Virus record (IMG/VR): IMGVR_UViG_3300044712_001255
Span: 1 to 64,000 of that record
Length of the DNA: 64,000 nt
Direction: 5' to 3' (one strand)
Positions 30,145 through 46,736 of this stretch are shown here, piece after piece. The translations under genes and the position numbers were made by a program. The first letter of the stretch is position 1. Every line of letters starts with the position of its first letter. The notes under the pieces were generated by a model that did no database searches, was not told where the DNA came from, and was given only the letters and a program-made list of their open reading frames with translations.

Positions 30145-30173
30145 TGTAAATGGTTGAATTTACTTGGTAGTAT
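30145..30173 (+). promoter_or_regulatory. Promoter TGTAAA-17-TAGTAT, 8 nt before ATG 30182
   Basis: Hexamers and spacing read directly. Confidence 0.5.
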
Positions 30174-30181
30174 GGAGTCCG

Positions 30182-33100
30182 ATGGTACGTGTAGCTCACC
30201 TTGCTGATGTTCATTTTAGGGGTTTGTCACGGCACTCAGAATACAGAGAAGTATTTGATGCCTTCGCAGAAGATGCTAAGCAGGCGAAGGTAGATGCTAT
30301 ATTAGTAGCAGGCGATATTTTTCACACGAAAACAACGGGTATAAGCCCTGAGTACATTCAAGAGATTTCTCGTTGGATGACACTGTTATCTACAATTGCA
30401 CCAACGCATATTACGCTTGGTAATCACGACGGCAACTTGGTCAATATGTCACGTCAAGATGCCGTGACGCCCATCTATGACATCGTTCAAGCAAACGTAC
30501 CTGCGGGTCGTCTGTTTTTGCACAAGTTTAGTGGCGTGTATGATTTCTTGCCTGGCATAAAACTGTGCGTATTGAGTATCTTTGATGAAGACAACTGGAA
30601 GGTAGTGAATCCGGTTGACGGACACATCAACATTGCAACTTATCATGGTCCTGTCAAAGGTGCTCAGACTGAATCAGATTGGACCATTGACGATGGGTTG
30701 TTGGTGGATTCGTTCTCTAGATACGATTTCGCAATGCTGGGTGATATTCACAAGACACAATTCCTTGGATATCGAAAAACTAAGAACGGTGAAAAGCCAT
30801 GGATAGCGTACCCCGGGTCAACGCTTCAGCAGACATACAAGGAATCGCTAGACCACGGTTATTTGCTATGGAACATTGAATCACGTGATGATTTTAATGT
30901 TGAGTTTCGCATTCTTCCCAATCCACGTCCATTTGTAACGCTGAATTGGCATGATGACGTTGAAGCAACTGCCAATGATGCGTTTAAGTACGAAAAGGGA
31001 TCTAGATTTCGTATCAAAAGCGATGTGCATCTTACGCAAAAAGACATTCAGGGATTGTCATCAATCCTCAAGAATGATCGTAACGCATCTGAGGTTACTT
31101 TCAAAATTGACGTGGCTGAGAAGATAAGTGCGCAGGCTCAATATGGTTCTCTTGACTTAGCACACGAAGATATTAGAAATCCTGAGGCTATTGTGAAACT
31201 TATTATGAAGTTTCACGAAAACACAAAGCTTGATGACGATGAGTCAAAGCAAATCAAAGACTTAGTACGAACATACCTCCAGCAAGCTACCTTAGGAGAT
31301 GAAGTATCTCGAGGTTCAAAGTGGTCTCTGCGTCAGCTTAAGTTTGATAACACGTTCACATATGGGCCAAATAACGTAATCAATTTTGACAAGTTGTCTG
31401 GTGTGACTGGAATTTTTGGGCCAAATCGTGTTGGTAAATCTTCAATACCTGGAACTCTTGCATATGTGCTGTACAATGATACAGACCGTGGTTCGATAAA
31501 GAATCAATACGTGTGTAACATTCGCAAGCCCTTTTGTTATGGAAGGGCGTTGATTGCGGTAAATGGCGTTGATTATGTGATTGAACGACAAACAACAAAG
31601 TTTGAGTCAAAGAGCGGCGTTGAACATGCTATCACTTCATTGAATGCTTGGCGAGTTCTACCAAATGGTGAGCTTGAAGATCTTGCTGGTGAAGCCCGCA
31701 ATGATACTGAAAAGGTGATTCGTAGGTTACTTGGTACGTCTGATGATTTTTTGATTACCGCGTTGTCGTCACAGGGTGATGCTGATTCATACGTCAAGTA
31801 TGGGTCAACAAGACGCTGGCAAGTACTTGCAAGATTTCTTGACATTGATGTCTTTGCCAAGATGGCAGATCTTGTGAAAGAAGACATCAAGGTTGCAAAG
31901 GCACAACTACGTAACTACCCAGAAAAGAATTGGTCTGAGCTTGCCGTTGCGCTAAAGGCCGATTTTAAAAGCTGTGATCACGATCTAGCACAAAAGGTAG
32001 CAGATTTGCTCGTTGTGCAGAATCAACTTGCGTTGTTGCGAGCGCAACTGGCAAAATACGATGACATCACGCCAGTTACTGAAGATGAACTTTCTTCTGC
32101 TAAGACAAAGAAAGTAACTCTCACAAGTAGATTAGGAAAGCTACAACGGCAAATTGACACGTGCAACGCATCAATTAAAACTATCAATGATGATAGTGAT
32201 AAACTACGAGATGAATTGCAAACATATGATGTTGAAACTCTCAACACAAGATTGGTATTATTGAAGTCGCTACGTGAACAACTTGCAACGTTGCGTCACA
32301 ATAGTGAAAAGCAACAAACGGCATCATCTACTGCAAAGAAATCTGTGAAGTTGCTTGATACTGTTCCTTGTGGAGACACGTTTCCAACGTGCAGATTCAT
32401 CAAAGATGCTCACGAAAATCGTAAAAATTTAGCTACGCTTGAAGCTACGACAAAGGCTGCGCTCGATGCAGTCTCAGAAGCTGAAGACACATTACAGACT
32501 CTAATAGCTGAAAGGGTTGAAGACGCGTTGTCTAACATTCAACGAATTCAGGAACAAATTAAGACATTCGATATTGATCTCTTGAAAAAAGAGAATGAAA
32601 TCGTTCGCCTGCAAGCTGAGTTTGATGCAACCACGATCGCCCTACGTGATGCTACGGCTGCTCTTGGCAAGCTTGAAGAGTCTGTACACAATGATCAGAA
32701 CACGGCAATCATCGACCTACAACAACAAATAGATGCTCTCGATGCTGAGGCTCATGCAATTGATAAAGAAAAACTTGCGCTTGCTTCTCGAAAGGGACGC
32801 ATCGAATCAGACGTATTGAAGTTAGCAGATGAAAGACGTCAACGCGAAAAGATTCTAAAGAGCATGAAGGTACATGAGTTGTTGTTCTTGGCGTTTTCAA
32901 AGAAGGGCATTCCAAGAATGATCATCAGCACGCAGTTGCCTGCGATCAATGCAGAGATTTCAAAAATCTTGTCTGGCATCGTGAATTACACTGTTGAATT
33001 TGAAAATGATGAAGATTCTGACAAGCTTGATCTATACCTCAACTACGGAGATTCTCGTCGTATCATTGAGCTTGGTTCTGGCATGGAGAAGATGATGGCG

Positions 33101-33349
33101 TCAATAGCCATTCGTGTCGCAATGACAAATGTATCTTCTTTACCGCGACCAGATATTTTCATCATTGATGAAGGATTTGGTAATCTTGATGAGAGTAATC
33201 TTGAATCATGCACTCGCTTGTTGCGGTCACTCACCCAATACTTCAGGAATGTGCTTGTCATTAGCCATGTTGATGCTATCAAGGATGCAATTGATAACAT
33301 GATCGAGATTACAAGGGACGAACGTGAGTCTCGAGTGGTGTATGATTGA
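30182..33349 (+). CDS. Fused Mre11/SbcD nuclease - Rad50/SbcC ATPase (gp47-gp46-like)
   Basis: HLADVH, AGDIFH, GNHD, GDIH; GPNRVGKS Walker A; coiled coil; GSGMEK signature; IIDEGFGNLD Walker B; all in one frame. Confidence 0.93.
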   Translation: MVRVAHLADVHFRGLSRHSEYREVFDAFAEDAKQAKVDAILVAGDIFHTKTTGISPEYIQEISRWMTLLSTIAPTHITLGNHDGNLVNMSRQDAVTPIYDIVQANVPAGRLFLHKFSGVYDFLPGIKLCVLSIFDEDNWKVVNPVDGHINIATYHGPVKGAQTESDWTIDDGLLVDSFSRYDFAMLGDIHKTQFLGYRKTKNGEKPWIAYPGSTLQQTYKESLDHGYLLWNIESRDDFNVEFRILPNPRPFVTLNWHDDVEATANDAFKYEKGSRFRIKSDVHLTQKDIQGLSSILKNDRNASEVTFKIDVAEKISAQAQYGSLDLAHEDIRNPEAIVKLIMKFHENTKLDDDESKQIKDLVRTYLQQATLGDEVSRGSKWSLRQLKFDNTFTYGPNNVINFDKLSGVTGIFGPNRVGKSSIPGTLAYVLYNDTDRGSIKNQYVCNIRKPFCYGRALIAVNGVDYVIERQTTKFESKSGVEHAITSLNAWRVLPNGELEDLAGEARNDTEKVIRRLLGTSDDFLITALSSQGDADSYVKYGSTRRWQVLARFLDIDVFAKMADLVKEDIKVAKAQLRNYPEKNWSELAVALKADFKSCDHDLAQKVADLLVVQNQLALLRAQLAKYDDITPVTEDELSSAKTKKVTLTSRLGKLQRQIDTCNASIKTINDDSDKLRDELQTYDVETLNTRLVLLKSLREQLATLRHNSEKQQTASSTAKKSVKLLDTVPCGDTFPTCRFIKDAHENRKNLATLEATTKAALDAVSEAEDTLQTLIAERVEDALSNIQRIQEQIKTFDIDLLKKENEIVRLQAEFDATTIALRDATAALGKLEESVHNDQNTAIIDLQQQIDALDAEAHAIDKEKLALASRKGRIESDVLKLADERRQREKILKSMKVHELLFLAFSKKGIPRMIISTQLPAINAEISKILSGIVNYTVEFENDEDSDKLDLYLNYGDSRRIIELGSGMEKMMASIAIRVAMTNVSSLPRPDIFIIDEGFGNLDESNLESCTRLLRSLTQYFRNVLVISHVDAIKDAIDNMIEITRDERESRVVYD

Positions 33350-33671: not shown

Positions 33672-34073
33672 ATGCCGACAAGCAAAGAGATCGATATCAA
33701 TGCACTGGGTCAGGCCATTGATACAACGTGGGGTCGTTCGTCTACGCCCCTCACTGCTACAACGTCTGTCAAAATGCAATTGATGGGTGCTGGCCTGTTA
33801 AAGGTAGTATTCAATAACGTAGTCACATTCAGGTCACAAGAAAGTTTTTCTCGTGTCAAGGCGTCGTGTGCCGATGAGGCAACTCGCATCATCAATGAAA
33901 CGATGAAGAATGTCAAGGCTTCGTACAAAGATCTCGCGCACCCTGATTGCAAGGCAACAATAACCTTGAAAGAAACGTCTTCAAACGACAGCGTTGAGAT
34001 GCTTTCAATGAATGTGTATAACCCAAAGCGCACTGCGAAGTATTGTCGGACGGCTGTGTTTGAATTTGCATGA
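33672..34073 (+). CDS. Hypothetical protein upstream of terminase
   Basis: CAGGAG SD before ATG 33672; ATGA overlap with terminase. Not recognisable as a small terminase. Confidence 0.7.
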   Translation: MPTSKEIDINALGQAIDTTWGRSSTPLTATTSVKMQLMGAGLLKVVFNNVVTFRSQESFSRVKASCADEATRIINETMKNVKASYKDLAHPDCKATITLKETSSNDSVEMLSMNVYNPKRTAKYCRTAVFEFA

Positions 34074-35716
34074 GCACACCGATAAGTCAAAAACAACAAG
34101 TCGCAGAAATCGTAAAATGTGGTAAAGATCCGGCATATTTCATTCGAAAGTATGTCAAGATCCAGCATCCTCTAAAGGGATTGATCCCATTTGAGATGTA
34201 CCCATACCAGGATACGTGCCTCGAAGATTTTGAGAAGCATCGTTTCAATATTGTTCTTAAGTCAAGGCAGCTTGGCTTGTCAACGTTAGGCGCAGCGTAT
34301 GCTTTGTGGCTAGCGATATTCTATCGTGAAAAGAACATTCTTGTTATTGCAACGAAGCTTTCTACCGCAATCAACTTCATCAAGAAGGTGAAAGTTGCTC
34401 TGGCGGCACTGCCTGCTTGGCTGAAGATTCCCAAGGAGATTGGCATTGCAAAGTCGGAAGTATCATTTGATAATGGCTCGCAGATCAAGGCAGTGCCCAC
34501 TGCGGAAGACGCTGGACGTTCAGAGGCTTTGTCGTTATTGATTGTCGATGAGGCTGCATTCATTAGAGATTTCGGGGAGATCTGGACAGGTCTTTTCCCA
34601 ACTCTCAGTACTGGCGGACGTGCGTTGATCATTTCAACGCCAAATGGCGTAGCAGGTGTCGGGGCACAATACTACCGGATGTGGACTGAGGGTGAGGCGG
34701 GACAAAACGATTTCAATACAGTGCGTCTTGAGTGGACAATTCATCCAGAGCACGACAAGAAATGGTACGACGATCAGTGTCGTCAGTTAGGTGATCCAAA
34801 GCGCATTGCGCAGGAGTTGCTATGTGACTTCTTATCGTCAGGAGACACGTACCTTCAACCAGAAGATTTGTCATGGGTACGAAGCCAAATCAAGGATCCC
34901 ATTTCAAGGGAGGGCCCGTCTCATAATGTGTGGATCTGGCACCGCCCAAACCCAGCACACAAGTACATCATATCAGCAGACGTAGCTCGTGGCGATGGAG
35001 CTGACTATTCAACGTTTCACATCTATGATTTTGAAGGATGTGAGATGGTCGCAGAATTTATGGGTAAGTTGCCGCCAGATCGTTTCGCAGAATTGCTTGA
35101 AACGTGGGGACACACGTATAATGATGCATTGATAGCGCCAGAGGTAAACACATATGGGTACATGACATGTGTTAAGCTTCGTGATGATGGATATCCCAAG
35201 TTATTCTACAAAAAGAACAAGGGTGATCCGTTCAACTATCTTCCAAAACAGGACGAGCTTCCAGGTTTCGATAATCAACAAAAGTCACGTACTCAAGTAC
35301 TATCAAAGCTTGAGGAGATGATTCGTAACAAACAACTGTGGATTCATTCTCGACGCCTGTATGAGCAGCTCAATACGTTTGTTTGGAATAACGGCAAGGC
35401 AATGGCGTCATCAGATAGCCACGATGATCTTGTTATCTCCGCTGCTATTGGCGCGTGGTTGTGTGGTGACGGCGGCAAAGTAAGCGAAACAGAACTACAA
35501 ATGATGTACGCAATGTTGAATGCGTCGAAGGTTGAATCCTCAGGCAGAGGATCAAAGTTGGAGGACATTGATCGCATCAAACCGCTTACGAGCGCAAACA
35601 TGTCTGCGTACAACTCTGCAAACATTGGAAAGCCACGAGATCCAACGGCTGTGCAGAGAAATTCATCTCGTAAGATGGGAAATGAACTTTCTGACTTCAC
35701 GTGGCTTCTTAGGTGA
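34070..35716 (+). CDS. terL: Terminase large subunit (T4 gp17-like)
   Basis: MYPYQ, LKSRQLGLST Walker A, LIVDEAAF Walker B, ISTPNG, ADVARGDGADYS, HDDLV. Confidence 0.95.
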   Translation: MSTPISQKQQVAEIVKCGKDPAYFIRKYVKIQHPLKGLIPFEMYPYQDTCLEDFEKHRFNIVLKSRQLGLSTLGAAYALWLAIFYREKNILVIATKLSTAINFIKKVKVALAALPAWLKIPKEIGIAKSEVSFDNGSQIKAVPTAEDAGRSEALSLLIVDEAAFIRDFGEIWTGLFPTLSTGGRALIISTPNGVAGVGAQYYRMWTEGEAGQNDFNTVRLEWTIHPEHDKKWYDDQCRQLGDPKRIAQELLCDFLSSGDTYLQPEDLSWVRSQIKDPISREGPSHNVWIWHRPNPAHKYIISADVARGDGADYSTFHIYDFEGCEMVAEFMGKLPPDRFAELLETWGHTYNDALIAPEVNTYGYMTCVKLRDDGYPKLFYKKNKGDPFNYLPKQDELPGFDNQQKSRTQVLSKLEEMIRNKQLWIHSRRLYEQLNTFVWNNGKAMASSDSHDDLVISAAIGAWLCGDGGKVSETELQMMYAMLNASKVESSGRGSKLEDIDRIKPLTSANMSAYNSANIGKPRDPTAVQRNSSRKMGNELSDFTWLLR

Positions 35717-36286: not shown

Positions 36287-39200
36287 ATGACAAAAAAGAA
36301 AGAAGACGCATCGCTGTTTCAACGTTTGACTCGCCTGTTTCGTTCAGGTGGCAAACTACGTCGTAAGGTAAAGACGTCTGATACGTTGCAAGCGGTGCCA
36401 GATAAGACAAAGTCGTCTGGCGTTCTTCTTTTTCAAAAGTCGATGTCTCCGACGTATGCGACTGTAACAAGCAACGCATACAATCTTTCTGAACGCCTGA
36501 TGCGATATCAGGATTTTCAAGAGATGGAATACACCGCTGAATTAGCATCAGCGCTTGACATATACGCTGATGAGTCTGTTCCACAAGATGACAAGGGACG
36601 CGTTCTTCACATCCATTCAGAGAACGAGAAAATCAAAGAGATTCTTGAGGACTTGTTCTACAATGTGTTGAACATCAGTTTTAACGGGCGTCCATGGGTA
36701 AGAAATCTTTGTAAGTACGGATGCTTCTTTTTGTATCTTGACGTATCGCCAGAATATGGCGTGATGAATGCTTTCCCAATCCCGGTGAACGAGATTGAGC
36801 GTGAGGAAAATTACGATAGAGAAGATCCGTTCGCTGTAAGATTTCGTTGGGTGACGCTTGGCAACAAGACGTTAGAGAATTGGGAAGTTGCTCACTTTAG
36901 GCTTTTGGGCAATGACATGTTCTTGCCTTACGGCTCTTCTGTTTTGGAACCAGCTCGACGCATTTGGCGACAGCTAATTCTTGCTGAGGACGCGATGCTT
37001 GTGTATCGTGTCGTAAGAGCTCCAGAACGTCGAGTATTCTACATTGACGTTGGTAATATCCCGGCAGACGAAGTTGATGCTTACATGGAGAAGCAGAAAA
37101 CACAGCTTCGTTCCAGCAGCGTTGTTGAGAACACCACCGGAAAACAAGATCTGCGGTACAACCCCATGCCGGTGCATAAAGATACACCCGTACCATTATT
37201 GGATGGTCGTACGGTGACGATAGAAAACTTAGCGCAAGAAATATCAGAGAACCCAAATAATGATGTGTGGGTTTATTCTGTGAATGACAGTGATCATAGA
37301 ATTGTTCCCGGTAGAGTTATATGGTGTGGTAAGAACTACTCCGCAGAAAAACTCATAAAAGTATGGTTAGATAACGACAGTTATGTCACGACTGCGCCTG
37401 AGCATCCATTTGTAATGCGTGACGGGTCAAATAAGAGAGCAGACGAACTTGTCGTGAATGACAGTTTAATGCCATTCTATCGTATAGAAACTAATAACGG
37501 GTATGAAGAAATTTATGACCCTCGTAGCAATGCATACGTCAAAACTCATAAAGTTGTTGCTAGTAATGTTTTAGTTGAGGAGTGGAATAACACAGAACAT
37601 AAGGTTGTTCATCACAAACATCCTGAGATCATTGGGAATAAGAGAAATAATCATCCAGATAATTTGCAAGTGATGTCATTTTGGGATCATCGAAGGTGGC
37701 ATATTGATAGATTACCATTGACATTACACAGACCTGATGTTTTACAAAAGACGCGTGAACGTTTGACGGCATGGAATAAGAGCTCGATAAAGAAACAACG
37801 TGTTTCTGAACTGAATAAGGAACGTAATTCTGTTGTAGCTATGGCAGGCTATAATGGAAGTGAGCTTCATAAATCACATAATGAAAATCGTCGTCAAGGC
37901 CAGAAGCGATCATGGGCAACAAATAAACAACAACGTTCACAAACTATGAAATGGATCATACCCGATGAATTTTTTGTCATCGGCGCACAGAAATTGCGTG
38001 AAGATCCTACGCTTAATAGACAAAGATTTCATGCTACAATGATGGCTGATTCTAATGTGATACGTTTGCTTAGAAGGGCGCAAATTACTAAGCGTGACGT
38101 CAATAAGATGTCAGAGGCAGCGTGGATTCGTCAATTACAAGAAAACACCGGCGCAACGTTTGGCACATTTAAGAGAACGACATTGGGCGATGCGTATGTT
38201 GCTCGCAAAAATCATAAAGTTTCACGAGTTGAGCATCTTGATGTGCAAGGTGAAGACGTCTATTGCATGACAGTTGTTGGACCAAACGGAGAAAATGACA
38301 GACACAACTTTGCAGTTTGTGGTTTGACGCCTTCAACTGATGGATCAACAAATGTAACGCAAGTAGATGGAATTATTCTTAAAAACTCAATTGAAGAGGA
38401 CTACTTCATAGCTGTTCGTGGCGGTGATACTGGCACAAAGATTGATACTCTCGCCGGCGGGCAAAATGCTGCCGCCGTTGAAGACGTCGAGTACATTCAG
38501 AAGAAGATGATTGCTGCTATCAAGATTCCACGTGCGTATCTTGGATATGATGACATGCTTTCGTCAAAGGCAACGCTGGCGCAAGAGGACATTCGTTTTG
38601 CGCGTACCATCAATTCAATTCAAAAGACCGTTGTTGCTGAGTTCAATAAGATCGCAATCATTCACCTATTTTCACATGGATATGATGGCGAAGATTTGAT
38701 GAACTTTACGCTAAGGCTGACCAACCCTTCGTCAATCGCAGAACAACAGAAGCTTGAGCTTTGGCGCGCAAGATTCGATATTGCTGGCACGGCGCCAGAT
38801 GGTATGCTATCAAAGCGCTGGATTGGAAAGACAATTCTCAACCTCACGGATTCTGAAATTCGTGAGATTCGCGAGGACATAGTCGCTGAAGGAGGAGAAG
38901 CTGAAGCCGGTGGCGGCGGAGGTGGAGGAGGCGGCGGTGGAGGGGGTCTGTTTGGTGGTGGAGGTGACCTTGGTGGTGGCGAAGGCGAAGCCGGTGGTGA
39001 AGAAGCCGCAGGCGGTGAAGAAGCAGCGCCAGAAGAAACAGAAGAGACTGAGGGCGATGTTCTCAAATCATCTGAAGATCACTCAGGTACGCCTATAAAG
39101 GTGACTGCTCGCGTAAAGTTACCGTCCGATAACGGATACGCAGGTACTGGAACGTATCAAAATTCTTCTGATATTTCCTCATCGAGATCTCAGCCCACAG

Positions 39201-39592
39201 ACGCAAAGAGCAAGCGTCATTCCAATTACGTCAATCGTGAAAAGAAAGGCCCAGAAGGTGGGTATCGAGATTTTGAAGGTGTTATATCTGCCCAACAAAA
39301 GGTGGGAGATCATACAGATATGAACTCTTTCAAAACATTGTTTGGCACGAAGGTATCTCGTCGTTATGGCGAATCAGTTGAACAGCCAGAGCGTACTATG
39401 TTGGCGATGGCACCTGATATGATTTCCTTATTTGAAAAGATGTCTCATGTCGGATTCGGTCGCAAGAAGGCGACGTTACGTCAAGGTGTCAATAGTGACA
39501 TCATCAGAGACAGCGTTGATATCCAAGATGAGATTGACGCAGGCGCAGGAGTCTTGTTAGAGGACCTAGATATTGTTGAGAACGAGGACTAA
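36287..39592 (+). CDS. Portal protein (T4 gp20-like) with an intein and a Gly/Glu-rich C-terminal extension
   Basis: ASALDIYADE, VAHFRLLG, PYGSSVLE, RAPERRVFYIDVGNIP, EEDYFIAVRGG...IDTLAGG, FARTINSIQ. Confidence 0.95.
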   Translation: MTKKKEDASLFQRLTRLFRSGGKLRRKVKTSDTLQAVPDKTKSSGVLLFQKSMSPTYATVTSNAYNLSERLMRYQDFQEMEYTAELASALDIYADESVPQDDKGRVLHIHSENEKIKEILEDLFYNVLNISFNGRPWVRNLCKYGCFFLYLDVSPEYGVMNAFPIPVNEIEREENYDREDPFAVRFRWVTLGNKTLENWEVAHFRLLGNDMFLPYGSSVLEPARRIWRQLILAEDAMLVYRVVRAPERRVFYIDVGNIPADEVDAYMEKQKTQLRSSSVVENTTGKQDLRYNPMPVHKDTPVPLLDGRTVTIENLAQEISENPNNDVWVYSVNDSDHRIVPGRVIWCGKNYSAEKLIKVWLDNDSYVTTAPEHPFVMRDGSNKRADELVVNDSLMPFYRIETNNGYEEIYDPRSNAYVKTHKVVASNVLVEEWNNTEHKVVHHKHPEIIGNKRNNHPDNLQVMSFWDHRRWHIDRLPLTLHRPDVLQKTRERLTAWNKSSIKKQRVSELNKERNSVVAMAGYNGSELHKSHNENRRQGQKRSWATNKQQRSQTMKWIIPDEFFVIGAQKLREDPTLNRQRFHATMMADSNVIRLLRRAQITKRDVNKMSEAAWIRQLQENTGATFGTFKRTTLGDAYVARKNHKVSRVEHLDVQGEDVYCMTVVGPNGENDRHNFAVCGLTPSTDGSTNVTQVDGIILKNSIEEDYFIAVRGGDTGTKIDTLAGGQNAAAVEDVEYIQKKMIAAIKIPRAYLGYDDMLSSKATLAQEDIRFARTINSIQKTVVAEFNKIAIIHLFSHGYDGEDLMNFTLRLTNPSSIAEQQKLELWRARFDIAGTAPDGMLSKRWIGKTILNLTDSEIREIREDIVAEGGEAEAGGGGGGGGGGGGGLFGGGGDLGGGEGEAGGEEAAGGEEAAPEETEETEGDVLKSSEDHSGTPIKVTARVKLPSDNGYAGTGTYQNSSDISSSRSQPTDAKSKRHSNYVNREKKGPEGGYRDFEGVISAQQKVGDHTDMNSFKTLFGTKVSRRYGESVEQPERTMLAMAPDMISLFEKMSHVGFGRKKATLRQGVNSDIIRDSVDIQDEIDAGAGVLLEDLDIVENED
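37169..38386 (+). mobile_element. Intein (406 aa) with HNH homing endonuclease and atypical Pro1
   Basis: Interrupts portal YNPM|SIEEDYF. Block A PVHKDTPVPLLDG, block B TAPEHPF, HNH VVHHKH...GNKRNNHPDNL, block F VYCMTV...HNF, block G ILKN|S. Confidence 0.93.
38888..39054 (+). repeat. Poly-Gly (13 Gly) and GGE(E/A) low-complexity tract in the portal
   Basis: Mixed GGN codons, so protein-level low complexity rather than a DNA microsatellite. Confidence 0.85.
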
Positions 39593-39595
39593 GAA

Positions 39596-40453
39596 ATGAG
39601 CACACGACATCGTAAGAAGCGCAATGCTGGACTCATGTATGAGTTTTTGGTTCGCACAATTTCTCGTGCGTTGTTGGACGACGACAAGCGTCGTCAGGCC
39701 ATTTCTCTTCGCATACTAAAACGTCATTTCAAGCCAGGATCTGAGCTATTCAGGGAGTTTCGTATTGCGAACGCCTTGTATAAGTCTACTGTATCATCAC
39801 CTGCCGTAGCTGCATCAATTATGCAAGAGGCAAAGGTTGCCGTGAAGGCTCTTGATGGTGCTCGCCTGGAACGAGAAAAATCAATTCTCATACGTGAGGT
39901 AAACCACAACCTGCAAGATCCTACATTCTACGATCAATCGATCAAGGACTATAAGGTGCTTGCTACGATTCAAACTCTGTTTGATGAATGGCGTGAACCT
40001 ACTGACATCGCCCTCCTTGCCGAGTACGAAGATAAGGTGAATCAGTGGCTTGTTACAAATAAGCAGATTGCCGAGTCGATTGATACAGACGCTGATCCTG
40101 GTACGGTGCGTCTTGTTTCACGAATAATGACACAGCGACTCAACGAAAAGTATTCTGATGCGTTGAATGAAGATCAGAAGGCTCTTGTGAGGGCGTACGC
40201 ATTGAGTGAAGCTGTTGGTAGTTCTGATACGATTAGACAACACCTTGAATCTGTCAGAACAAGATTACTACAGCAGATTAGAGAGCACGAAAGTGCCGCA
40301 GGGGGCGACAGGGAAAAGATAAATGAAGTGAAGCAAATGTTGCTGGATGAAAACATCACAACAATTGATGATGATACCGTAACACGTTTTATGCTTTACT
40401 CGAAGTTGTGTGCTGATCTTGCGCTCTCAGAGGTGCAGAATGCAAAAGTCTAA
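39596..40453 (+). CDS. Head-module protein (putative prohead core)
   Basis: RHRKKRNAGLMYEFL; located between portal and prohead protease. Confidence 0.7.
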   Translation: MSTRHRKKRNAGLMYEFLVRTISRALLDDDKRRQAISLRILKRHFKPGSELFREFRIANALYKSTVSSPAVAASIMQEAKVAVKALDGARLEREKSILIREVNHNLQDPTFYDQSIKDYKVLATIQTLFDEWREPTDIALLAEYEDKVNQWLVTNKQIAESIDTDADPGTVRLVSRIMTQRLNEKYSDALNEDQKALVRAYALSEAVGSSDTIRQHLESVRTRLLQQIREHESAAGGDREKINEVKQMLLDENITTIDDDTVTRFMLYSKLCADLALSEVQNAKV

Positions 40454-41108
40454 TAGACAACGGCTTCTAAGATCCTGGCCAACAAACTTCAACTTTTCTG
40501 TTGACAAGTTGAATGAATCATCTGGATTTGGCGTTGTTTCCGCTGATCAAGAACGCACCATTCTACGTGGTATCATACAAAAAGCAGATACTCTCAACCA
40601 AAATGGAAGAATCTATCCACGTGCAATCTTGATGCGTGAGGTACAAAACTATCAGAAGTACATTGCTGAACGTAGGTCAACTGGTGAATTAGATCATCCA
40701 GATTCATCTGTTGTCAGCCTGAAAAATGCATCGCACCTTATCACTAAGGCGTGGATGGAAGGTGACGTTGTCTATGGAGAGTTGATGGTACTGTCAACCC
40801 CGTCAGGACAGATTCTGATGAATCTTCTAGCAGATGGCGTGAAGCTTGGTATTTCATCACGCGGTGTGGGTACAACGAAACGTGATGGTGATTATCACGT
40901 TGTGCAGGATGATTTTCAAATCATCTGCTGGGATATGGTGAGCGAACCCTCAACGCCAGATGCGTTCATGTTGCCCACTAATTCTGCATATATGCCAGAA
41001 GGAAGAGAACTTGTTGGCATGCCGTCGATCTCCGAAAATATCGATTCGCATCAACCACGAATTTCTTTGCATTCTACTTTGGATGATATCCTATCATTTC
41101 GAAAGTGA
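40440..41108 (+). CDS. Prohead core protease (T4 gp21-like)
   Basis: NQNGRIYP, GELDHP, SLKNASH, LGISSRGVG, DMVSEPSTPDAF. Start moved to ATG 40440 (GAGGT SD). Confidence 0.95.
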   Translation: MQKSNRQRLLRSWPTNFNFSVDKLNESSGFGVVSADQERTILRGIIQKADTLNQNGRIYPRAILMREVQNYQKYIAERRSTGELDHPDSSVVSLKNASHLITKAWMEGDVVYGELMVLSTPSGQILMNLLADGVKLGISSRGVGTTKRDGDYHVVQDDFQIICWDMVSEPSTPDAFMLPTNSAYMPEGRELVGMPSISENIDSHQPRISLHSTLDDILSFRK

Positions 41109-41123
41109 TGACGGTCATGTCTT

Positions 41124-41609
41124 ATGAGCGGTCACTTTGATGATGGAATTCTGGATGCAGTTTGTGCGCTTATCACAGACGTAGCGTCGGCAAAAGTAAC
41201 CGCTGCTCACATGATTGACGTGATGCGGCACACAAATTGTATTGGGCTGTCTGCGCCACAAATAGGCGTAACATCACGTATGATATTGTTGAACGGTCAT
41301 GTTCTTGACATGACACGTCAAGAGATCATTATGCTCAATCCAAACATCATAGTCAAAGCTGATGAATGGCGATCAATGTCTGAGACGTGTACATCATTCC
41401 CAGGATTCAGCGCAACAATTCCTCGAGCAAAGAGTGTCTTTGTTGAGTACATTGATTTGAGTGGAACAGTGCGCCGTGAAGAATTTCAAGACATTGCCGC
41501 TCGCGTTGTTCAACATGAAATTGATCACCTTGACGGAATCACGATACTGGATCGAGCACCGAGACCCATCAGGAAGAAATATATTTCATCTAAGAGGAGT
41601 CGCCAATGA
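41124..41609 (+). CDS. def: Peptide deformylase
   Basis: GLSAPQIG, ETCTS (variant of EGCLS) and QHEIDHLDG. Confidence 0.92.
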   Translation: MSGHFDDGILDAVCALITDVASAKVTAAHMIDVMRHTNCIGLSAPQIGVTSRMILLNGHVLDMTRQEIIMLNPNIIVKADEWRSMSETCTSFPGFSATIPRAKSVFVEYIDLSGTVRREEFQDIAARVVQHEIDHLDGITILDRAPRPIRKKYISSKRSRQ

Positions 41610-44828: not shown

Positions 44829-46736
44829 ATGTCTAGATACTTTACACTCAATCAGCTCGCTGAGGGCATCAAGCAGAAGCACGTCGGTGCAGAGCGTGCT
44901 CGTCTCATCGAGAAATGGGCCCGTACGGGTCTTCTGCGTGGCCTTGATGGCCGCAAGCGCGAAAACATGGCGCAGCTCCTGGAAAACCAGGCTGGTCAGG
45001 TGCTCCTCGAGAGCAACGCCCTGTCGACAGGCGGCGGTGGTCTGACTTCCTCGGGACAGATCCAGGGTTTCAGCAACATCGCATTCCCGATCGTTCGTCG
45101 TGTATTCGGTGGCCTTGTTGCCAACGAGCTCGTGTCGATCCAGCCGATGTCCTTGCCTTCTGGTCTGATCTTCTATATCGACTACACCTACGGCAGCAAT
45201 GTCGGTGGTACAGCCGGTATCGGTCTGTCCAATACGGCGACGGCAGACACATATGCCCGTGGCCAGTCACTCTACAACAACCCCGCAGGTAAGGGAATCC
45301 AGTCTGGATCTCTTGCAACGGGTGGTCAGTATGACCTTGTTGGCACTGGATACACCAAGCTTCACACTGGATCAACTTTGATCTCCGTGAATGCAAACGC
45401 AATCGGTGCATGGTCCGGAGCATCCGACACCTTCGTGTCTGGTACGACCGTGGCGGCTCTCACTGACTTCTCTGGCTCGAATGCTCGCTTCGCTAACTAC
45501 GATCCGCAACTTCAGACTGACCTGTCTCTGAACACGCTCGATTACTGCTTCGCCCACTTCGCAGTTGCTGACATCGTGTCTGCTCTGCCGACAGCGAACG
45601 TTGCTGATGTTGATCAGTTCGCAGTGACCGGTTTCACAACGGCTGGAAGCTCCCAGGCATGGGGACAGGCATATCAGGCAGGAACTGGTGTGTTGAACCT
45701 CCGTCGCCTCAACAAGCGCGGCGATTTCTCTGGCGGCGTGTTCACTCCGAATCCGCTGAACGGAACTCACATCCAGACGGTTGTTCGTCTGTCTGCTGCT
45801 GGCGGTAAGCCAGGTCCAGCAACCACTGGTACCGAGACAACTACCTGCTCCATCACGGTGGCGGATGTTGTGAAGGCTGGTGACTCTGTTGGAGCAACCC
45901 TGACGATTCCGTCGTTTGAGTCTGACTTCGGTTCGACTCCTTCGCCGGCAATCCCGGACATCGACATCAAGATCGAGACCATCTCGATCACCGCAACCAC
46001 ACGCAAGCTGCGTGCTCGTTGGACTCCCGAGCTTGCTCAGGACCTCAACGCGTACCACAGCACTGACGCTGAGGTTGAGCTCACCAGCATTCTCTCCGAG
46101 CAGATCGCTCTTGAAATCGACCGCGAGATCTTGAACGAGCTTCTCCTTGAGGCAAACGGTGCGAACTACTACTGGAGCCGTGCTCCTGGCCGCTTCGTGG
46201 ACAAGACCACTGGCGCTCCGATCCAGCTCGCCAACGCGCTGTCAATCGGTCCGGCCTTCACCGGTACTGTTCAGGATTGGTACCAGACACTTGTCGAGAC
46301 CGTCATCGACGTTGCGAACACCATTCATAGGAAGACCCTCCGTGGAGCGGCAAACTTCTGCGTGACTGGCCCCGACGTTGCCACGATCTTCGAGGCATCG
46401 ATCCTCTACAAGCCGAAGTACACCATCGATGGTGAGGGGCAGATCGCTTCCCCGTTCACTGTCGGAGCCGAGGCTGTTGGAACGCTGTCGAATCGTTTCA
46501 CTGTCTACAAGGATCCTTACTTCCCTCGCAACCGCATCCTAGTCGGTTTCAAGGGTGGAAGCTACCTGGAGACAGGATTCGTGTACGCTCCTTACGTCCC
46601 GCTGATTGTCACCCCGACGATCTACGCGCCAGAGGACTTTACGCCTCGCAAGGGTGTGATGACTCGCTATGGCAAGAAGATGGTCAGAAGCGATTTTTAC
46701 GGCACCGTGACCATATTGGACATGAACATCGTCTAA
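44829..46736 (+). CDS. Major capsid protein (T4 gp23-like)
   Basis: EKW.RTGLL, FPIVRRVF, VQPMSLPSGLIF, RKLRARWTPELAQDL..YH..DAE.EL, EIDREI, YAPYVPL, MTRYG. Confidence 0.97.
   Translation: MSRYFTLNQLAEGIKQKHVGAERARLIEKWARTGLLRGLDGRKRENMAQLLENQAGQVLLESNALSTGGGGLTSSGQIQGFSNIAFPIVRRVFGGLVANELVSIQPMSLPSGLIFYIDYTYGSNVGGTAGIGLSNTATADTYARGQSLYNNPAGKGIQSGSLATGGQYDLVGTGYTKLHTGSTLISVNANAIGAWSGASDTFVSGTTVAALTDFSGSNARFANYDPQLQTDLSLNTLDYCFAHFAVADIVSALPTANVADVDQFAVTGFTTAGSSQAWGQAYQAGTGVLNLRRLNKRGDFSGGVFTPNPLNGTHIQTVVRLSAAGGKPGPATTGTETTTCSITVADVVKAGDSVGATLTIPSFESDFGSTPSPAIPDIDIKIETISITATTRKLRARWTPELAQDLNAYHSTDAEVELTSILSEQIALEIDREILNELLLEANGANYYWSRAPGRFVDKTTGAPIQLANALSIGPAFTGTVQDWYQTLVETVIDVANTIHRKTLRGAANFCVTGPDVATIFEASILYKPKYTIDGEGQIASPFTVGAEAVGTLSNRFTVYKDPYFPRNRILVGFKGGSYLETGFVYAPYVPLIVTPTIYAPEDFTPRKGVMTRYGKKMVRSDFYGTVTILDMNIV

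What the first reader, a model, noticed from the sequence alone, without database searches (positions are those of the whole stretch)
37169..38386. Atypical Pro1 intein in the essential portal: class-3-like Cys without the WCT triplet
Seen: the intein starts with Pro (non-nucleophilic), has Cys at block F position 4 (VYCMTV), Ala at B7, Phe at B12, Leu-Lys-Asn at the C-terminus, Ser at +1, and an extra segment between blocks F and G. Established: class 1 inteins need Cys/Ser at position 1; class 2 (KlbA) have Ala1 with +1 Cys; class 3 use the F4 Cys and typically carry Trp-B12, Cys-F4 and Thr-G5; a penultimate His is usual. Only the Cys is kept here. Because the portal is essential and excision restores YNPM-SIEEDYF, the element should still splice. 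Inference: a variant class-3 mechanism, and possibly a redox- or condition-dependent switch on head assembly through the single catalytic Cys.
Basis: partly seen in the sequence, partly recalled or inferred. Interest (0 to 1): 0.82.

Follow-up and report, generated by a model that had tools for sequence, protein, structure and literature searches.

The report
Pro1 two-cysteine intein in phage portal
The portal gene of this 324-kb phage carries a real self-splicing protein insert that lacks the usual first-residue nucleophile; it belongs to a large, undescribed lineage that seems to have reached internal-cysteine splicing from ordinary inteins at the same site.

Summary
Window 37169-38386 encodes a 406-aa HINT-fold intein with an HNH endonuclease inside a T4-type portal. 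Removing it rejoins the Pfam portal profile exactly (position 252|253).

Its features are Pro1, Ala-B7, His-B10, Phe-B12, Cys-F4 (C366), Leu-Lys-Asn and Ser+1. These are lineage traits, not errors: 184 Pro1 relatives were found at three portal sites, and F4 Cys is kept in 224 of 225.

The most likely mechanism is class-3-type splicing, with C366 attacking the Met-Pro bond. This is inferred, not shown.

- Pro1 is the state of the class 3 prototype, so it is not atypical.
- An "FCV" triplet is already listed in a published census of class 3 inteins.
- C366 is not the only candidate cysteine. Cys53 is kept in 180 of 184 Pro1 members and is Ala in the Cys1 relatives.

New here: the lineage is homologous end to end with class 1 HNH inteins at the same portal site, and a Cys1 + F4-Cys group lies between them. 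It shows no detectable relation to the class 3 prototype. That suggests a separate, stepwise origin. The redox-switch idea is untested, but a Cys-Cys precedent exists.

The parts
36287..39592 (+). T4-type (gp20-like) portal gene, 1101 codons plus stop; the host of the intein
   Evidence: Pfam Portal_T4 E 1.5e-70. Matches T4 gp20 structures 3JA7 and 6UZC.
36287..37168 (+). N-extein (portal residues 1-294), ending ...DLRYNPM
   Evidence: The Portal_T4 profile match ends at position 252 at residue 294.
37169..38386 (+). Intein, 406 aa: HINT splicing domain split by an HNH endonuclease domain
   Evidence: Pfam Intein_splicing E 1.9e-10. AF2 model pLDDT 91.1. Foldseek hits to inteins. 737 homologues.
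37169..37207 (+). Block A (PVHKDTPVPLLDG). Pro1 (CCG 37169-37171) stands in place of the Cys/Ser nucleophile.
   Evidence: Sequence. Pro in 184 family members; Cys in 15 relatives.
37322..37333 (+). W52-C53-G54-K55 motif. Cys53 (TGT 37325-37327) is a second, lineage-specific conserved cysteine.
   Evidence: C in 180/184 Pro1 members at sites a, b and c; Ala in 14/15 Cys1 relatives. K55 is K in 156 Pro1 members and V/I/E in the Cys1 group. The HMM alignment puts it opposite the His of the DnaE 'WHD' motif.
37376..37417 (+). Block B (…VTTAPEHPFVMR). Ala76 = B7, His79 = B10, Pro80 = B11, Phe81 = B12.
   Evidence: Sequence. His invariant 184/184. B7 is Ala in 157, Thr in 17, Ser in 8. B12 is Phe in 147, Tyr in 16, Val in 9, Trp in 6. 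hhalign aligns F81 with Trp67 of MP-Be.
37481..38203 (+). Endonuclease insert, with the HNH core around 37604-37708 (VHHKHPEIIGNKRNNHPDNLQVMSFWDHRRWH)
   Evidence: The family profile hits I-HmuI HNH homing endonuclease 1U3E at E 9.7e-5. His/Asn columns are invariant in alignment A1. Homologues carry Pfam HNH_3. Pfam gave no HNH hit for the window copy itself at E<=1.
38210..38221 (+). N348-H349-K-V motif just upstream of block F, invariant in the family and shared with the class 1 sister inteins
   Evidence: Invariant columns N356/H357 of alignment A1. Present in the class 1 sisters. Role unknown.
38255..38317 (+). Block F (DVYCMTVVGPNGENDRHNFAV). Cys366 = F4 (TGC 38264-38266). Contains a 6-residue insert (GPNGEN) before the invariant His379-Asn-Phe.
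   Evidence: F4 Cys in 224/225; His379 in 225/225. F4-to-His spacing is 13 in the Pro1 clade and 7 in the Cys1 relatives and class 1 sisters.
38318..38365 (+). Extra segment between blocks F and G (CGLTPSTDGSTNVTQV), including the non-conserved Cys384
   Evidence: His-to-Asn spacing is 27 here, family mode 22-23, class 1 sisters 12. Position 384 is Cys in only 59 of about 225. Model pLDDT is 73-89 here.
38366..38386 (+). Block G (DGIILKN). Leu404 = G5, Lys405 = G6 (no penultimate His), Asn406 = G7.
   Evidence: Sequence. Family G5 is V 106, L 78, I 15, T 2. G6 is variable, with His in only 11. G7 is Asn in 197 and Gln in 5.
38387..38389 (+). Ser+1 (TCA), the first C-extein residue. Aligns with Ser329 of T4 gp20.
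   Evidence: Sequence. Family +1 residues are S 147, C 35, T 18. Alignment to 6UZC starts at residue 329.
38387..39592 (+). C-extein (SIEEDYF…), including a Gly/Glu-rich low-complexity stretch and a long C-terminal tail
   Evidence: The Portal_T4 profile resumes at position 253 at the first C-extein residue.

Best explanation
This is a functional, mobile HNH-type intein that must splice out of the portal precursor before the dodecameric portal can form.

Residue 1 is Pro, so the usual N-S acyl shift is impossible. I propose the following route:
1. An internal cysteine, most likely Cys366 at block F position 4, attacks the Met(-1)-Pro1 peptide bond. His79 (B10) activates that bond. This gives a thioester-branched intermediate.
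2. The N-extein is passed to Ser+1.
3. Asn406 cyclises and releases the intein.
4. An O-to-N shift leaves ...YNPM-SIEEDYF....

This is the class 3 route, but run on a different scaffold:
- no Trp-B12, no Thr-G5 and no penultimate His;
- two lineage-specific insertions around block F;
- a second near-invariant cysteine, Cys53. I take Cys53 to be an auxiliary active-site residue, either positioning or activating Cys366 or acting as a possible disulfide partner.

The element is one member of a large lineage confined to T4-type portals. That lineage descends from class 1 HNH inteins at the same insertion site.

Shown: the anatomy, the boundaries, the conservation and the relationships. Inferred: every chemical step.
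For: **It is an intein with exact boundaries.**
- Pfam hits, and profile continuity at 252|253.
- Intein-free alleles exist, including the closest portal relative L004, which is 79% identical in the C-extein.
- The AF2 model is confident: pLDDT 91.1 with a HINT fold.

**Splicing residues are under selection.** The lineage has only 30% mean column identity, yet it keeps:
- His-B10 in 184/184, F4 Cys in 224/225, HNF His in 225/225;
- terminal Asn in 197 (Gln in 5), and a +1 residue that is always S, T or C.
- Natural mini-inteins of 165-200 aa have lost the endonuclease but keep P1, C53, H79, C366, HNF and N.

**Published support for the mechanism.**
- F4 Cys is the obligate nucleophile in class 3 inteins. 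The prototype has Pro1, and it still splices as W67F/Y, T339A/S/V or H340A (PMC2807308).
- The AceL NrdHF intein (MCT triplet, no F13 or G6 His) uses the class 3 route (PMC7891396).
- Even a natural Cys+1 cannot replace F4 Cys (PMC5222942).

**Mobility.**
- The HNH residues are invariant and the profile hits I-HmuI.
- GC drops to 0.37-0.39 inside the intein against 0.45 in the flanks.
- The lineage occupies three portal sites.
- P0037, the closest intein-bearing portal relative in hand (exteins 79-86% identical), carries an intein only 49% identical.
Against: - No biochemical data exist for any member of this lineage.
- Thr-G5 is part of the proposed Cys-His-Thr triad of class 3 inteins (PMC7664689). 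It is replaced here by Leu/Val/Ile.
- Trp-B12 to Ala blocks splicing in three class 3 inteins.
- F4 Cys is also present in the Cys1 relatives. Its presence therefore does not by itself mark the nucleophile.
- Cys53 appears on the same branch as Pro1. It could be the real replacement for Cys1.
- The tools return no model coordinates, so the distances from C366 and C53 to the scissile bond were not measured.
- Only the 64-kb window of a 324-kb contig was examined, so a second portal gene elsewhere is not excluded.
Confidence: 0.55

Rival explanations
1. Cys53 is the initiating nucleophile, or an obligatory first station of a thiol relay C53 -> C366 -> Ser+1. On this view the nucleophile moved from position 1 to position 53 when Cys1 became Pro. 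That would be a mechanism distinct from classes 1-3.
For: - C53 is Cys in 180/184 Pro1 members at all three sites and Ala in 14/15 Cys1 relatives. It therefore arose on the same branch as Pro1, whereas F4 Cys is older.
- C53 lies 26 residues before the B10 His. This is the same spacing as Hedgehog D303 before H329. D303 is an active-site residue that binds Zn together with Cys258 (position 1) and His329 (PMC9163320).
- The HMM alignment places C53 opposite the His of the DnaE 'WHD' motif.
- The usual class 3 helpers W-B12 and T-G5 are absent.
Against: - The Pro1/C53 co-occurrence rests on essentially one evolutionary event, because the Cys1 group is one clan.
- Equivalence with the Hedgehog D303 slot rests on spacing only. 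It was not tested by a structural alignment.
- In Msm DnaBi1 a second Cys (C48) is essential yet reported as not directly catalytic.
- F4 Cys is the proven nucleophile wherever class 3 inteins have been tested.
Confidence: 0.2
2. Class-2-like route: Ser+1 attacks the Met-Pro amide directly, and Cys366 only tunes the active site as F4 Asp does in class 1.
For: - No nucleophile at position 1.
- The class 3 signature is incomplete.
- Site-a members of the lineage have Cys+1.
Against: - Known class 2 inteins are all KlbA orthologues with Cys+1.
- Ser+1 could not initiate splicing in the class 3 inteins tested, and even a natural Cys+1 could not.
- Near-absolute conservation of F4 Cys across S, T and C at +1 is hard to explain by a tuning role.
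Confidence: 0.07
3. The insert is a decayed or non-splicing intein. The portal either tolerates it or is a pseudogene.
For: - No experimental evidence of splicing.
- Pfam detected no HNH domain in the window copy itself.
- Only part of the 324-kb genome was seen.
Against: - The 1101-codon frame is open.
- All splicing residues are intact and conserved in hundreds of relatives.
- The insertion breaks the most conserved portal motif, at T4 gp20 Ser329.
- Endonuclease-free mini-inteins still keep the splicing residues.
Confidence: 0.04
4. Pro1 is a sequencing or assembly error for a Cys or Ser codon.
For: None found.
Against: - Pro1 occurs in 184 relatives from independent data sets, together with its co-varying states Ala-B7, Cys53 and a non-His G6.
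- The window is identical to the IMG/VR contig.
- CCG to TGY or TCN would need at least one specific change, and the co-varying residues are all of the Pro1 type.
Confidence: 0.01

Closest known systems
Class 3 inteins, prototype mycobacteriophage Bethlehem 'DnaB' intein (in the terminase gene, L002:7680-8702)
   Same: - Pro1, His-B10, Cys at F4, Ser/Thr at +1 and a terminal Asn.
- Phage host gene.
- Presumed thioester branch at block F.
   Different: - Phe instead of Trp at B12, Leu instead of Thr at G5, Lys instead of His at G6.
- A 6-residue insert inside block F and a segment about 10-15 residues longer between F and G.
- An HNH endonuclease; 82.5% of class 3 inteins carry LAGLIDADG.
- The extra conserved Cys53.
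- No BLAST similarity at E<=10, and hhalign gives only E 0.068 over blocks A-B.
- Class 3 structures rank only 44th and 49th in the fold search.
'FCV' entries in the class 3 census of Hoffmann et al. 2020 (Table S1, PMC7891396)
   Same: The same type of B12/F4/G5 triplet as the commonest state of this lineage (F-C-V; the window copy is F-C-L). Under that paper's working definition (no Cys at position 1, Cys at C2:4) the window intein counts as class 3.
   Different: Only 7 of 1702 entries are listed, and the paper does not describe or test them. Whether they are portal inteins was not checked.
AceL NrdHF split class 3 intein (PDB 6ZGQ)
   Same: It deviates from WCT and lacks the block F and G histidines, yet it was shown experimentally to use the class 3 route. 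It comes from a metagenomic phage.
   Different: It keeps Thr-G5, has Met at B12 and Ala1, and is naturally split with a GIY-YIG gene between the halves. There is no sequence relation.
Msm DnaBi1 class 3 intein (PDB 6BS8)
   Same: A second cysteine lies between blocks A and B (Cys48). It is indispensable for splicing, and under oxidative stress it forms a reversible disulfide with the F4 Cys. This is the obvious model for the C53/C366 pair.
   Different: Cys48 is described as non-conserved among class 3 inteins, whereas C53 is near-invariant in this lineage. DnaBi1 has a canonical WCT triplet, is a mini-intein and sits in a bacterial helicase. Structural equivalence of C48 and C53 was not tested.
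Class 1 HNH inteins at the same portal site (e.g. P0216:1051-1416, P0222:460-858) and the Cys1 + F4-Cys group (e.g. P0018:507-900)
   Same: - Same insertion point (…RYNPx|…|S-x-[DE]-E-D).
- Same HNH domain, same NHKV and DSLMP motifs.
- End-to-end alignment: 28-32% identity with E 1e-31 to 1e-42, and about 26-37% identity with E down to 1e-80.
   Different: - They have Cys1, Thr-B7, Lys/Arg-B11 and Ala53.
- The class 1 sisters have Thr, Asp or Asn at F4 (two sequences that first fell outside the family C-terminal profile carry G-D and G-C here, the latter with Cys at F4) and a short F-G distance of 12.
- The intermediate group has F4 Cys, a penultimate His and the long F-G segment, but lacks the block F insert.
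Hedgehog Hint domain, Asp303
   Same: An active-site residue 26 positions before the TXXH His. C53 lies 26 positions before His79.
   Different: It is an aspartate that acts as general base for cholesterol. Hedgehog undergoes autoprocessing, not splicing. The equivalence is inferred from spacing only.

Membership tests
Intein (HINT-fold protein-splicing element) | HINT splicing domain with blocks A, B, F and G | tested here: met
   Pfam PF14890 E 1.9e-10, above the cut-off. AF2 pLDDT 91.1 and Foldseek probability 1.00 to many intein structures. Blocks located.
Intein (HINT-fold protein-splicing element) | In-frame insertion whose exact removal restores a conserved host protein | tested here: met
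   Portal_T4 profile positions 252|253 meet at the junction. Intein-free homologues read DLRYNPL-SVDEDYF.
Intein (HINT-fold protein-splicing element) | C-terminal Asn (or Gln) followed by Cys, Ser or Thr at +1 | tested here: met
   Asn406 and Ser+1. Family values: N 197, Q 5; +1 is S, T or C.
Intein (HINT-fold protein-splicing element) | Demonstrated protein splicing | not testable with these tools
   Needs a reporter assay or virion mass spectrometry.
Class 3 inteins | No Cys, Ser or Thr at intein position 1 | tested here: met
   Pro1 (CCG 37169-37171). The prototype also has Pro1.
Class 3 inteins | Cys at block F position 4 | tested here: met
   Cys366 in VYCMTV. 224/225 in the family.
Class 3 inteins | Trp at block B position 12 | tested here: not met
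   Phe81, aligned with Trp67 of MP-Be. Family values: F 147, Y 16, V 9, W 6.
Class 3 inteins | Thr at block G position 5 | tested here: not met
   Leu404. Family values: V 106, L 78, I 15, T 2.
Class 3 inteins | Ser or Thr at +1 | tested here: met
   Ser+1. Members at portal site a instead have Cys+1.
Class 3 inteins | Membership of the single (monophyletic) class 3 lineage described in the literature | tested here: not met
   No BLAST hit to the prototype at E<=10. No class 3 structure among the PDB profile hits at E<=10. The nearest relatives are class 1 inteins at the same site. A deep relationship cannot be excluded.
Class 3 inteins | Block F thioester-branched intermediate; splicing abolished by F4 Cys mutation | not testable with these tools
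   A biochemical criterion.
Class 1 inteins | Cys, Ser or Thr at position 1 performing an N-S/O acyl shift, with Thr-B7 as helper | tested here: not met
   Pro1 and Ala76.
Class 2 (KlbA-type) inteins | Ala1, Cys+1 attacking the N-terminal amide directly, KlbA orthology | tested here: not met
   Pro1, Ser+1, portal host gene. The KlbA structure 2JMZ is only a distant fold hit.
HNH homing endonuclease domain | HNH (beta-beta-alpha-metal) motif with conserved His, Asn and His | tested here: inconclusive
   The family profile matches I-HmuI 1U3E at E 9.7e-5. His/Asn columns are invariant and homologues carry PF13392. Pfam reported no HNH family for the window copy at E<=1. Activity is untested.

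The most novel reading that the evidence does not exclude
Internal-cysteine (class-3-type) protein splicing arose a second time, stepwise, inside a lineage of class 1 HNH inteins of T4-type portals. The proposed order is: class 1 (Cys1, F4 Thr/Asp/Asn), then Cys1 + F4 Cys, then Pro1 + Cys53 + F4 Cys. The new Cys53 is catalytically required, either as first nucleophile or relay or as the disulfide partner of Cys366. That would make this a two-cysteine mechanism with a built-in redox trap, not a plain class 3 intein. It would contradict two published views: that class 3 arose in a single event, and that class 3 cannot evolve directly from class 1.
Probability: 0.3. Interest if true: 0.8.

Novelty: new variant of a known kind. 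Interest (0 to 1): 0.6.

Why it matters
**Mechanism.** Class 3 splicing is currently defined by the WCT triplet and explained by a Cys-His-Thr triad. Here is a lineage with 184 Pro1 members among the proteins retrieved (308 database cluster representatives match the intein at E<=1e-30) that keeps only the Cys and the His, adds another Cys, and still sits in an essential gene. It is a natural test of which residues the mechanism really needs.

**Evolution.** Published work holds that class 3 inteins arose once (PMC4031507) and cannot evolve directly from class 1, because several compensating changes would be needed at once (PMC7664689). At this one portal site, class 1 inteins, a Cys1 + F4-Cys group and the Pro1 lineage coexist as clear homologues. 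This gives a ready series of natural intermediates that can be cloned and assayed.

**Practical.** The natural mini-inteins of 165-200 aa with Ser, Thr or Cys at +1 are candidates for protein-engineering tools. The C53/C366 pair could give redox-controlled splicing.

**Phage biology.** Portal genes of these large phages carry inteins at eight or more sites (read from the junction contexts). Head assembly therefore depends on several splicing reactions.

Tried and rejected

No read-level check of the CCG codon or of intein-free variants was possible, and read laying was therefore not used.
- Megablast of the portal against GenBank phages found no match.
- tblastn of the intein against the same collection found only partial, weak hits to other inteins. 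No deposited phage in that collection carries this lineage.
- Pfam on the endonuclease part of the window intein gave no HNH hit at E<=1. The HNH assignment rests on the family profile.
- The structure tools return no coordinates, so the C53-C366 and C366-scissile-bond distances could not be measured.

**Comparison with the class 3 prototype.**
- Bethlehem gp51 turned out to hold a different intein.
- The real prototype sits in the terminase gene.
- It gave no BLAST hit and only a weak hhalign match.

**Literature.**
- Two searches aimed at confirming my recollection that Ssp DnaE His48 binds zinc together with F4 Asp and Cys+1 found nothing. A look through one further paper also found nothing. 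That recollection is not used as evidence.
- My memory that Arg50 replaces the penultimate His was contradicted by a review that names Arg-B11, so I dropped it.
- Tori & Perler 2011 is not held.
- No paper was found that describes Pro1 inteins in T4-type portals.

**Other checks.**
- A scan of the window for further inteins of this kind found none.
- The sequencing-error explanation was rejected.
Full report
**1. What is at the coordinates**

The window equals the first 64 kb of IMG/VR contig UViG_3300044712_001255, which is 324,468 bp long. This makes it a jumbo phage (locus L003 is 100% identical at the same coordinates).

ORF 36287-39592 (+) encodes 1101 aa and is a T4-type portal (Pfam Portal_T4, E 1.5e-70). 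It sits among head and packaging genes:
- large terminase, 34070-35716;
- prohead protease, 40410-41108;
- Gp23-type capsid protein, 44829-46736.

Portal residues 295-700 (window 37169-38386) match Pfam Intein_splicing (E 1.9e-10, above the curated cut-off).

**2. Boundaries**

Scanned separately, the N-extein ends at Portal_T4 profile position 252 and the C-extein begins at position 253. Excision of exactly these 406 residues therefore restores an unbroken portal.

Portals with an empty site read DLRYNPL-SVDEDYF. There are 16 such proteins. The window's closest portal relative, L004 (79% identical in the C-extein), is also intein-free. Ser+1 aligns with Ser329 of T4 gp20.

**3. Structure**

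An AlphaFold2 model of the intein with 8 flanking residues per side, built on a 68-sequence alignment, has mean pLDDT 91.1. It shows beta-rich N- and C-terminal parts with a helical middle domain.
- Foldseek finds intein HINT domains with probability 1.00.
- The family profile also matches the HNH homing endonuclease I-HmuI (1U3E, E 9.7e-5).
- The HNH His and Asn columns are invariant in the family.
- Pfam itself reported no HNH family for the window copy.

**4. It is one member of a large lineage**

- A word-indexed search found 737 homologues, essentially all in proteins carrying Portal_T4 plus Intein_splicing, and often HNH_3.
- An exhaustive HMMER search found 3080 cluster representatives at E<=1e-3 and 308 at E<=1e-30.
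- Among the 228 proteins retrieved I located about 200 family inteins.

They occupy three different conserved portal motifs:
- site a: W-x-R-N-L | C-K-Y-G-D, with Cys at +1;
- site b: D-L-R-Y-N-P-x | S-V-D-E-D-Y-F, the window's site, with Ser or Thr at +1;
- site c: T-L-P-G-G-Q-F | T-G-D-I-E-D, with Thr at +1.

The window portal has sites a (36710) and c (38468) empty. At site c it has Ala where the occupied alleles have Thr.

Conservation in the lineage is as follows.

| Position | State in the lineage |
|---|---|
| Residue 1 | Pro in 184 |
| B10 | His 184/184 |
| B7 | Ala 157, Thr 17, Ser 8 |
| B12 | Phe 147, Tyr 16, Val 9, Trp 6 |
| F4 | Cys 224/225 |
| HNF His | 225/225 |
| G5 | Val 106, Leu 78, Ile 15, Thr 2 |
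| G6 | Variable; His in only 11 |
| G7 | Asn 197, Gln 5 |
| +1 | Ser 147, Cys 35, Thr 18 |

The window's "odd" residues are therefore the norm of its lineage, and a sequencing error at CCG is excluded.

Natural mini-inteins of 165-200 aa have lost the endonuclease but keep P1, C53, H79, C366, HNF and N. That is what selection for splicing would produce.

**5. A second conserved cysteine**

Cys53 (W52-C53-G54-K55; TGT at 37325-37327) is Cys in 180 of 184 Pro1 members at all three sites. It is Ala in 14 of 15 relatives that begin with Cys. Several other positions change together with residue 1:

| Position | Pro1 members | Cys1 relatives |
|---|---|---|
| B7 | Ala | Thr |
| B11 | Pro | Arg/Lys |
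| Residue 55 | Lys | Val/Ile/Glu |
| G6 | non-His | His |

The Cys1 relatives form one clan, so this covariation amounts to roughly one evolutionary event and has no statistical weight.

On where C53 sits:
- The HMM alignment places it opposite the His of the DnaE "WHD" motif.
- It lies 26 residues before the B10 His, the spacing of Hedgehog Asp303 before His329. Asp303 is an active-site residue that binds zinc with Cys258 and His329 (PMC9163320).

This equivalence is an inference from spacing. I could not measure distances, because the models' coordinates are not returned.

**6. Relationship to other inteins**

At site b there are also ordinary class 1 inteins. They have Cys1, Thr-B7, Ala53, Thr/Asp/Asn at F4 and a short block F-G distance. 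They share the HNH domain and the NHKV and DSLMP motifs.
- The window intein aligns with them from residue 5 to about 385 at 28-32% identity, E 1e-31 to 1e-42.
- It aligns with the Cys1 + F4-Cys group at about 26-37% identity, with E as low as 1e-80.
- The class 3 prototype (mycobacteriophage Bethlehem, L002:7680-8702; junctions as published) gives no hit at E<=10.
- hhalign against the prototype reaches only E 0.068 over blocks A-B. It does align Phe81 with Trp67.

Profile searches of the PDB return only class 1 inteins and a BIL domain at E<=10, and no class 3 structure. For a confident model of a natural mini-intein of the lineage (pLDDT 91.3), the best fold matches are class 1 inteins, with target-normalised TM-scores up to 0.84. 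The class 3 structures 6ZGQ and 6RIX rank 44th and 49th.

In an IQ-TREE (quick) tree of the splicing domains:
- all Pro1 inteins from sites a, b and c form one clan (SH-aLRT 97);
- the Cys1 + F4-Cys group forms a neighbouring clan (93);
- the class 1 sisters lie on the other side;
- one Cys1 sequence (P0195:146) is nested in a site-a Pro1 clade, an apparent reversal.

Indels follow the same order:

| Group | F4-to-His spacing | His-to-Asn spacing |
|---|---|---|
| Class 1 sisters | 7 | 12 |
| Cys1 + F4-Cys group | 7 | 22-29 |
| Pro1 clade | 13 | 22-23 (27 in the window) |

The simplest reading is a stepwise path: class 1, then gain of F4 Cys, then a longer F-G segment, then Pro1 + Cys53 + a block F insert. 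The tree is unrooted apart from the assumed class 1 outgroup. It used a short search, and deep intein phylogeny is weak. Independence from canonical class 3 is therefore likely but not proven.

**7. What the literature already knows**

- Class 3 inteins were defined by a non-nucleophilic residue 1 co-varying with Trp-B12, Cys-F4 and Thr-G5, and by Ser/Thr at +1. The prototype has Pro1. Only the Cys is absolutely required: W67F/Y splice well at 15 °C, and T339A/S/V and H340A splice (PMC2807308).
- Trp-B12 to Ala blocks three other class 3 inteins, and Cys+1 cannot replace F4 Cys (PMC5222942).
- The AceL NrdHF intein has an MCT triplet and lacks both block F/G histidines, yet it uses the class 3 route. 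The same paper defines class 3 operationally (no Cys at position 1, Cys at C2:4). It lists the triplets among 1702 inteins as WCT 1685 and FCV 7, without comment (PMC7891396). The window intein (F-C-L) belongs with those FCV entries by type.
- Reviews state that class 3 is monophyletic and arose once (PMC4031507). A structural study proposes a Cys-His-Thr(G5) triad and argues that class 3 cannot evolve directly from class 1 (PMC7664689).
- In the class 3 Msm DnaBi1 intein, a non-block Cys48 is indispensable. Under oxidative stress it forms a reversible disulfide with F4 Cys118 that blocks splicing (PMC6195587).
- I found no paper describing Pro1 inteins in T4-type portals.

**8. Most likely mechanism**

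The intein splices, because the lineage preserves exactly the residues needed for splicing in an essential gene.

With Pro at position 1, the first nucleophile must be internal or at +1. By analogy with every tested intein that combines a non-nucleophilic residue 1 with F4 Cys, Cys366 attacks the Met-Pro bond, which His79 activates. The acyl group then moves to Ser+1, Asn406 cyclises, and an O-N shift completes ligation.

Thr-G5, Trp-B12 and His-G6 are replaced by a different local architecture: the block F insert, the longer F-G hairpin and Cys53/Lys55. I rate this at 0.55.

The main rival, at 0.2, is that Cys53 itself took over from Cys1 as first nucleophile or relay. A class-2-like direct attack by Ser+1 (0.07), a dead intein (0.04) and a sequencing error (0.01) are unlikely.

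**9. The redox or conditional-switch idea**

Nothing in the sequence shows regulation. Catalytic thiols are intrinsically oxidant-sensitive, and the Msm DnaBi1 precedent makes a C53-C366 disulfide trap a concrete, testable hypothesis. It remains speculation for a phage protein made in a reducing cytoplasm.

**10. Mobility**

- The HNH residues are conserved.
- GC falls to 0.37-0.39 inside the intein against about 0.45 around it.
- The closest portal relative has no intein.
- P0037, the closest intein-bearing portal relative in hand (exteins 79-86% identical), carries an intein only 49% identical.
- The lineage has moved between three portal sites.

All of this fits an active or recently active homing element.

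**11. Verdict**

The element is best described as a new variant of class-3-type inteins: it works like class 3 by inference, but it fails two signature features and does not group with the known class 3 lineage.

What makes it worth follow-up is not the window copy alone. It is the lineage it reveals: abundant, uncharacterised, two-cysteine, and linked by natural intermediates to class 1 inteins.

**Limits**

- No biochemistry.
- No model coordinates.
- Only 228 of several thousand homologues were examined.
- Trees were built by quick methods.

Noticed in passing
window 1-64000 (whole window); L003: The window is identical in sequence and coordinates to the first 64 kb of IMG/VR contig UViG_3300044712_001255, which is 324,468 bp long. 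The host is therefore a jumbo phage. Megablast of the portal gene found no DNA-level relative among GenBank phages.
   Followed up: partly
window 36704-36715 and 38447-38485: Portal sites a (…RNL|CKYG…, Cys codon at 36710-36712) and c (…TLAGGQN|AAAVED…, 38468) are occupied by inteins of the same lineage in other phages. Both are empty here. At site c this portal has Ala where the intein-bearing alleles have the Thr+1 nucleophile.
   Followed up: partly
related proteins P0121, P0122 and others: Portal proteins of related phages reach 2800-2900 aa. They carry inteins at eight or more different insertion contexts, mostly class 1, and several per protein. Portal genes of this phage group are an intein hot spot.
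   Followed up: partly
P0195:146-567 (site a): One intein nested inside a Pro1 site-a clade (SH-aLRT 98) begins with Cys and has Thr-B7, while keeping F4 Cys and grouping with the Pro1 clade. This looks like a reversal from Pro1 to Cys1, or a recombinant.
   Followed up: no
site-a members, e.g. P0018:179-353 and P0123:518-922: 32 Pro1 + F4-Cys inteins have Cys at +1, and some have Trp at B12. [quoted passage not shown]
   Followed up: no
window 38210-38221: An Asn-His-Lys-Val motif just before block F is invariant in the whole superfamily, class 1 sisters included. It is not one of the named splicing blocks, and its role is unknown.
   Followed up: no
window 38880-39592: The portal C-terminus has a Gly/Glu-rich low-complexity run (about 38890-39060, GC up to 0.54). 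It is followed by a tail of roughly 220 residues beyond the Portal_T4 profile.
   Followed up: no
window 30164-33349: One 1061-aa ORF combines an SbcD/Mre11-type phosphoesterase (N-terminal part) with an SbcC/Rad50-type ATPase. In T4 these are two separate genes, gp47 and gp46.
   Followed up: no
window 41124-41609: A peptide deformylase gene (Pfam Pep_deformylase, E 1.7e-39) lies among the head-morphogenesis genes, directly after the prohead protease.
   Followed up: no
window 44829-46736: The Gp23-type major capsid protein is 635 aa. The best-matching stretch to the Pfam and PHROG profiles begins only near residue 365, so much of the N-terminal part may be extra. It showed no match to this intein's N- and C-terminal pieces.
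   Followed up: no
L001:7578-9296 (-), mycobacteriophage Bethlehem gp51: The metallophosphoesterase of phage Bethlehem holds an intein that begins with Cys1 but has Cys at the F4-like position (EVWCLRV) and ends …HLTGN|S. This is another Cys1 + F4-Cys combination, in the same phage that carries the class 3 prototype.
   Followed up: no
window 37100-38300: GC content falls to 0.37-0.39 inside the intein, against about 0.45 in the flanking portal sequence.
   Followed up: partly
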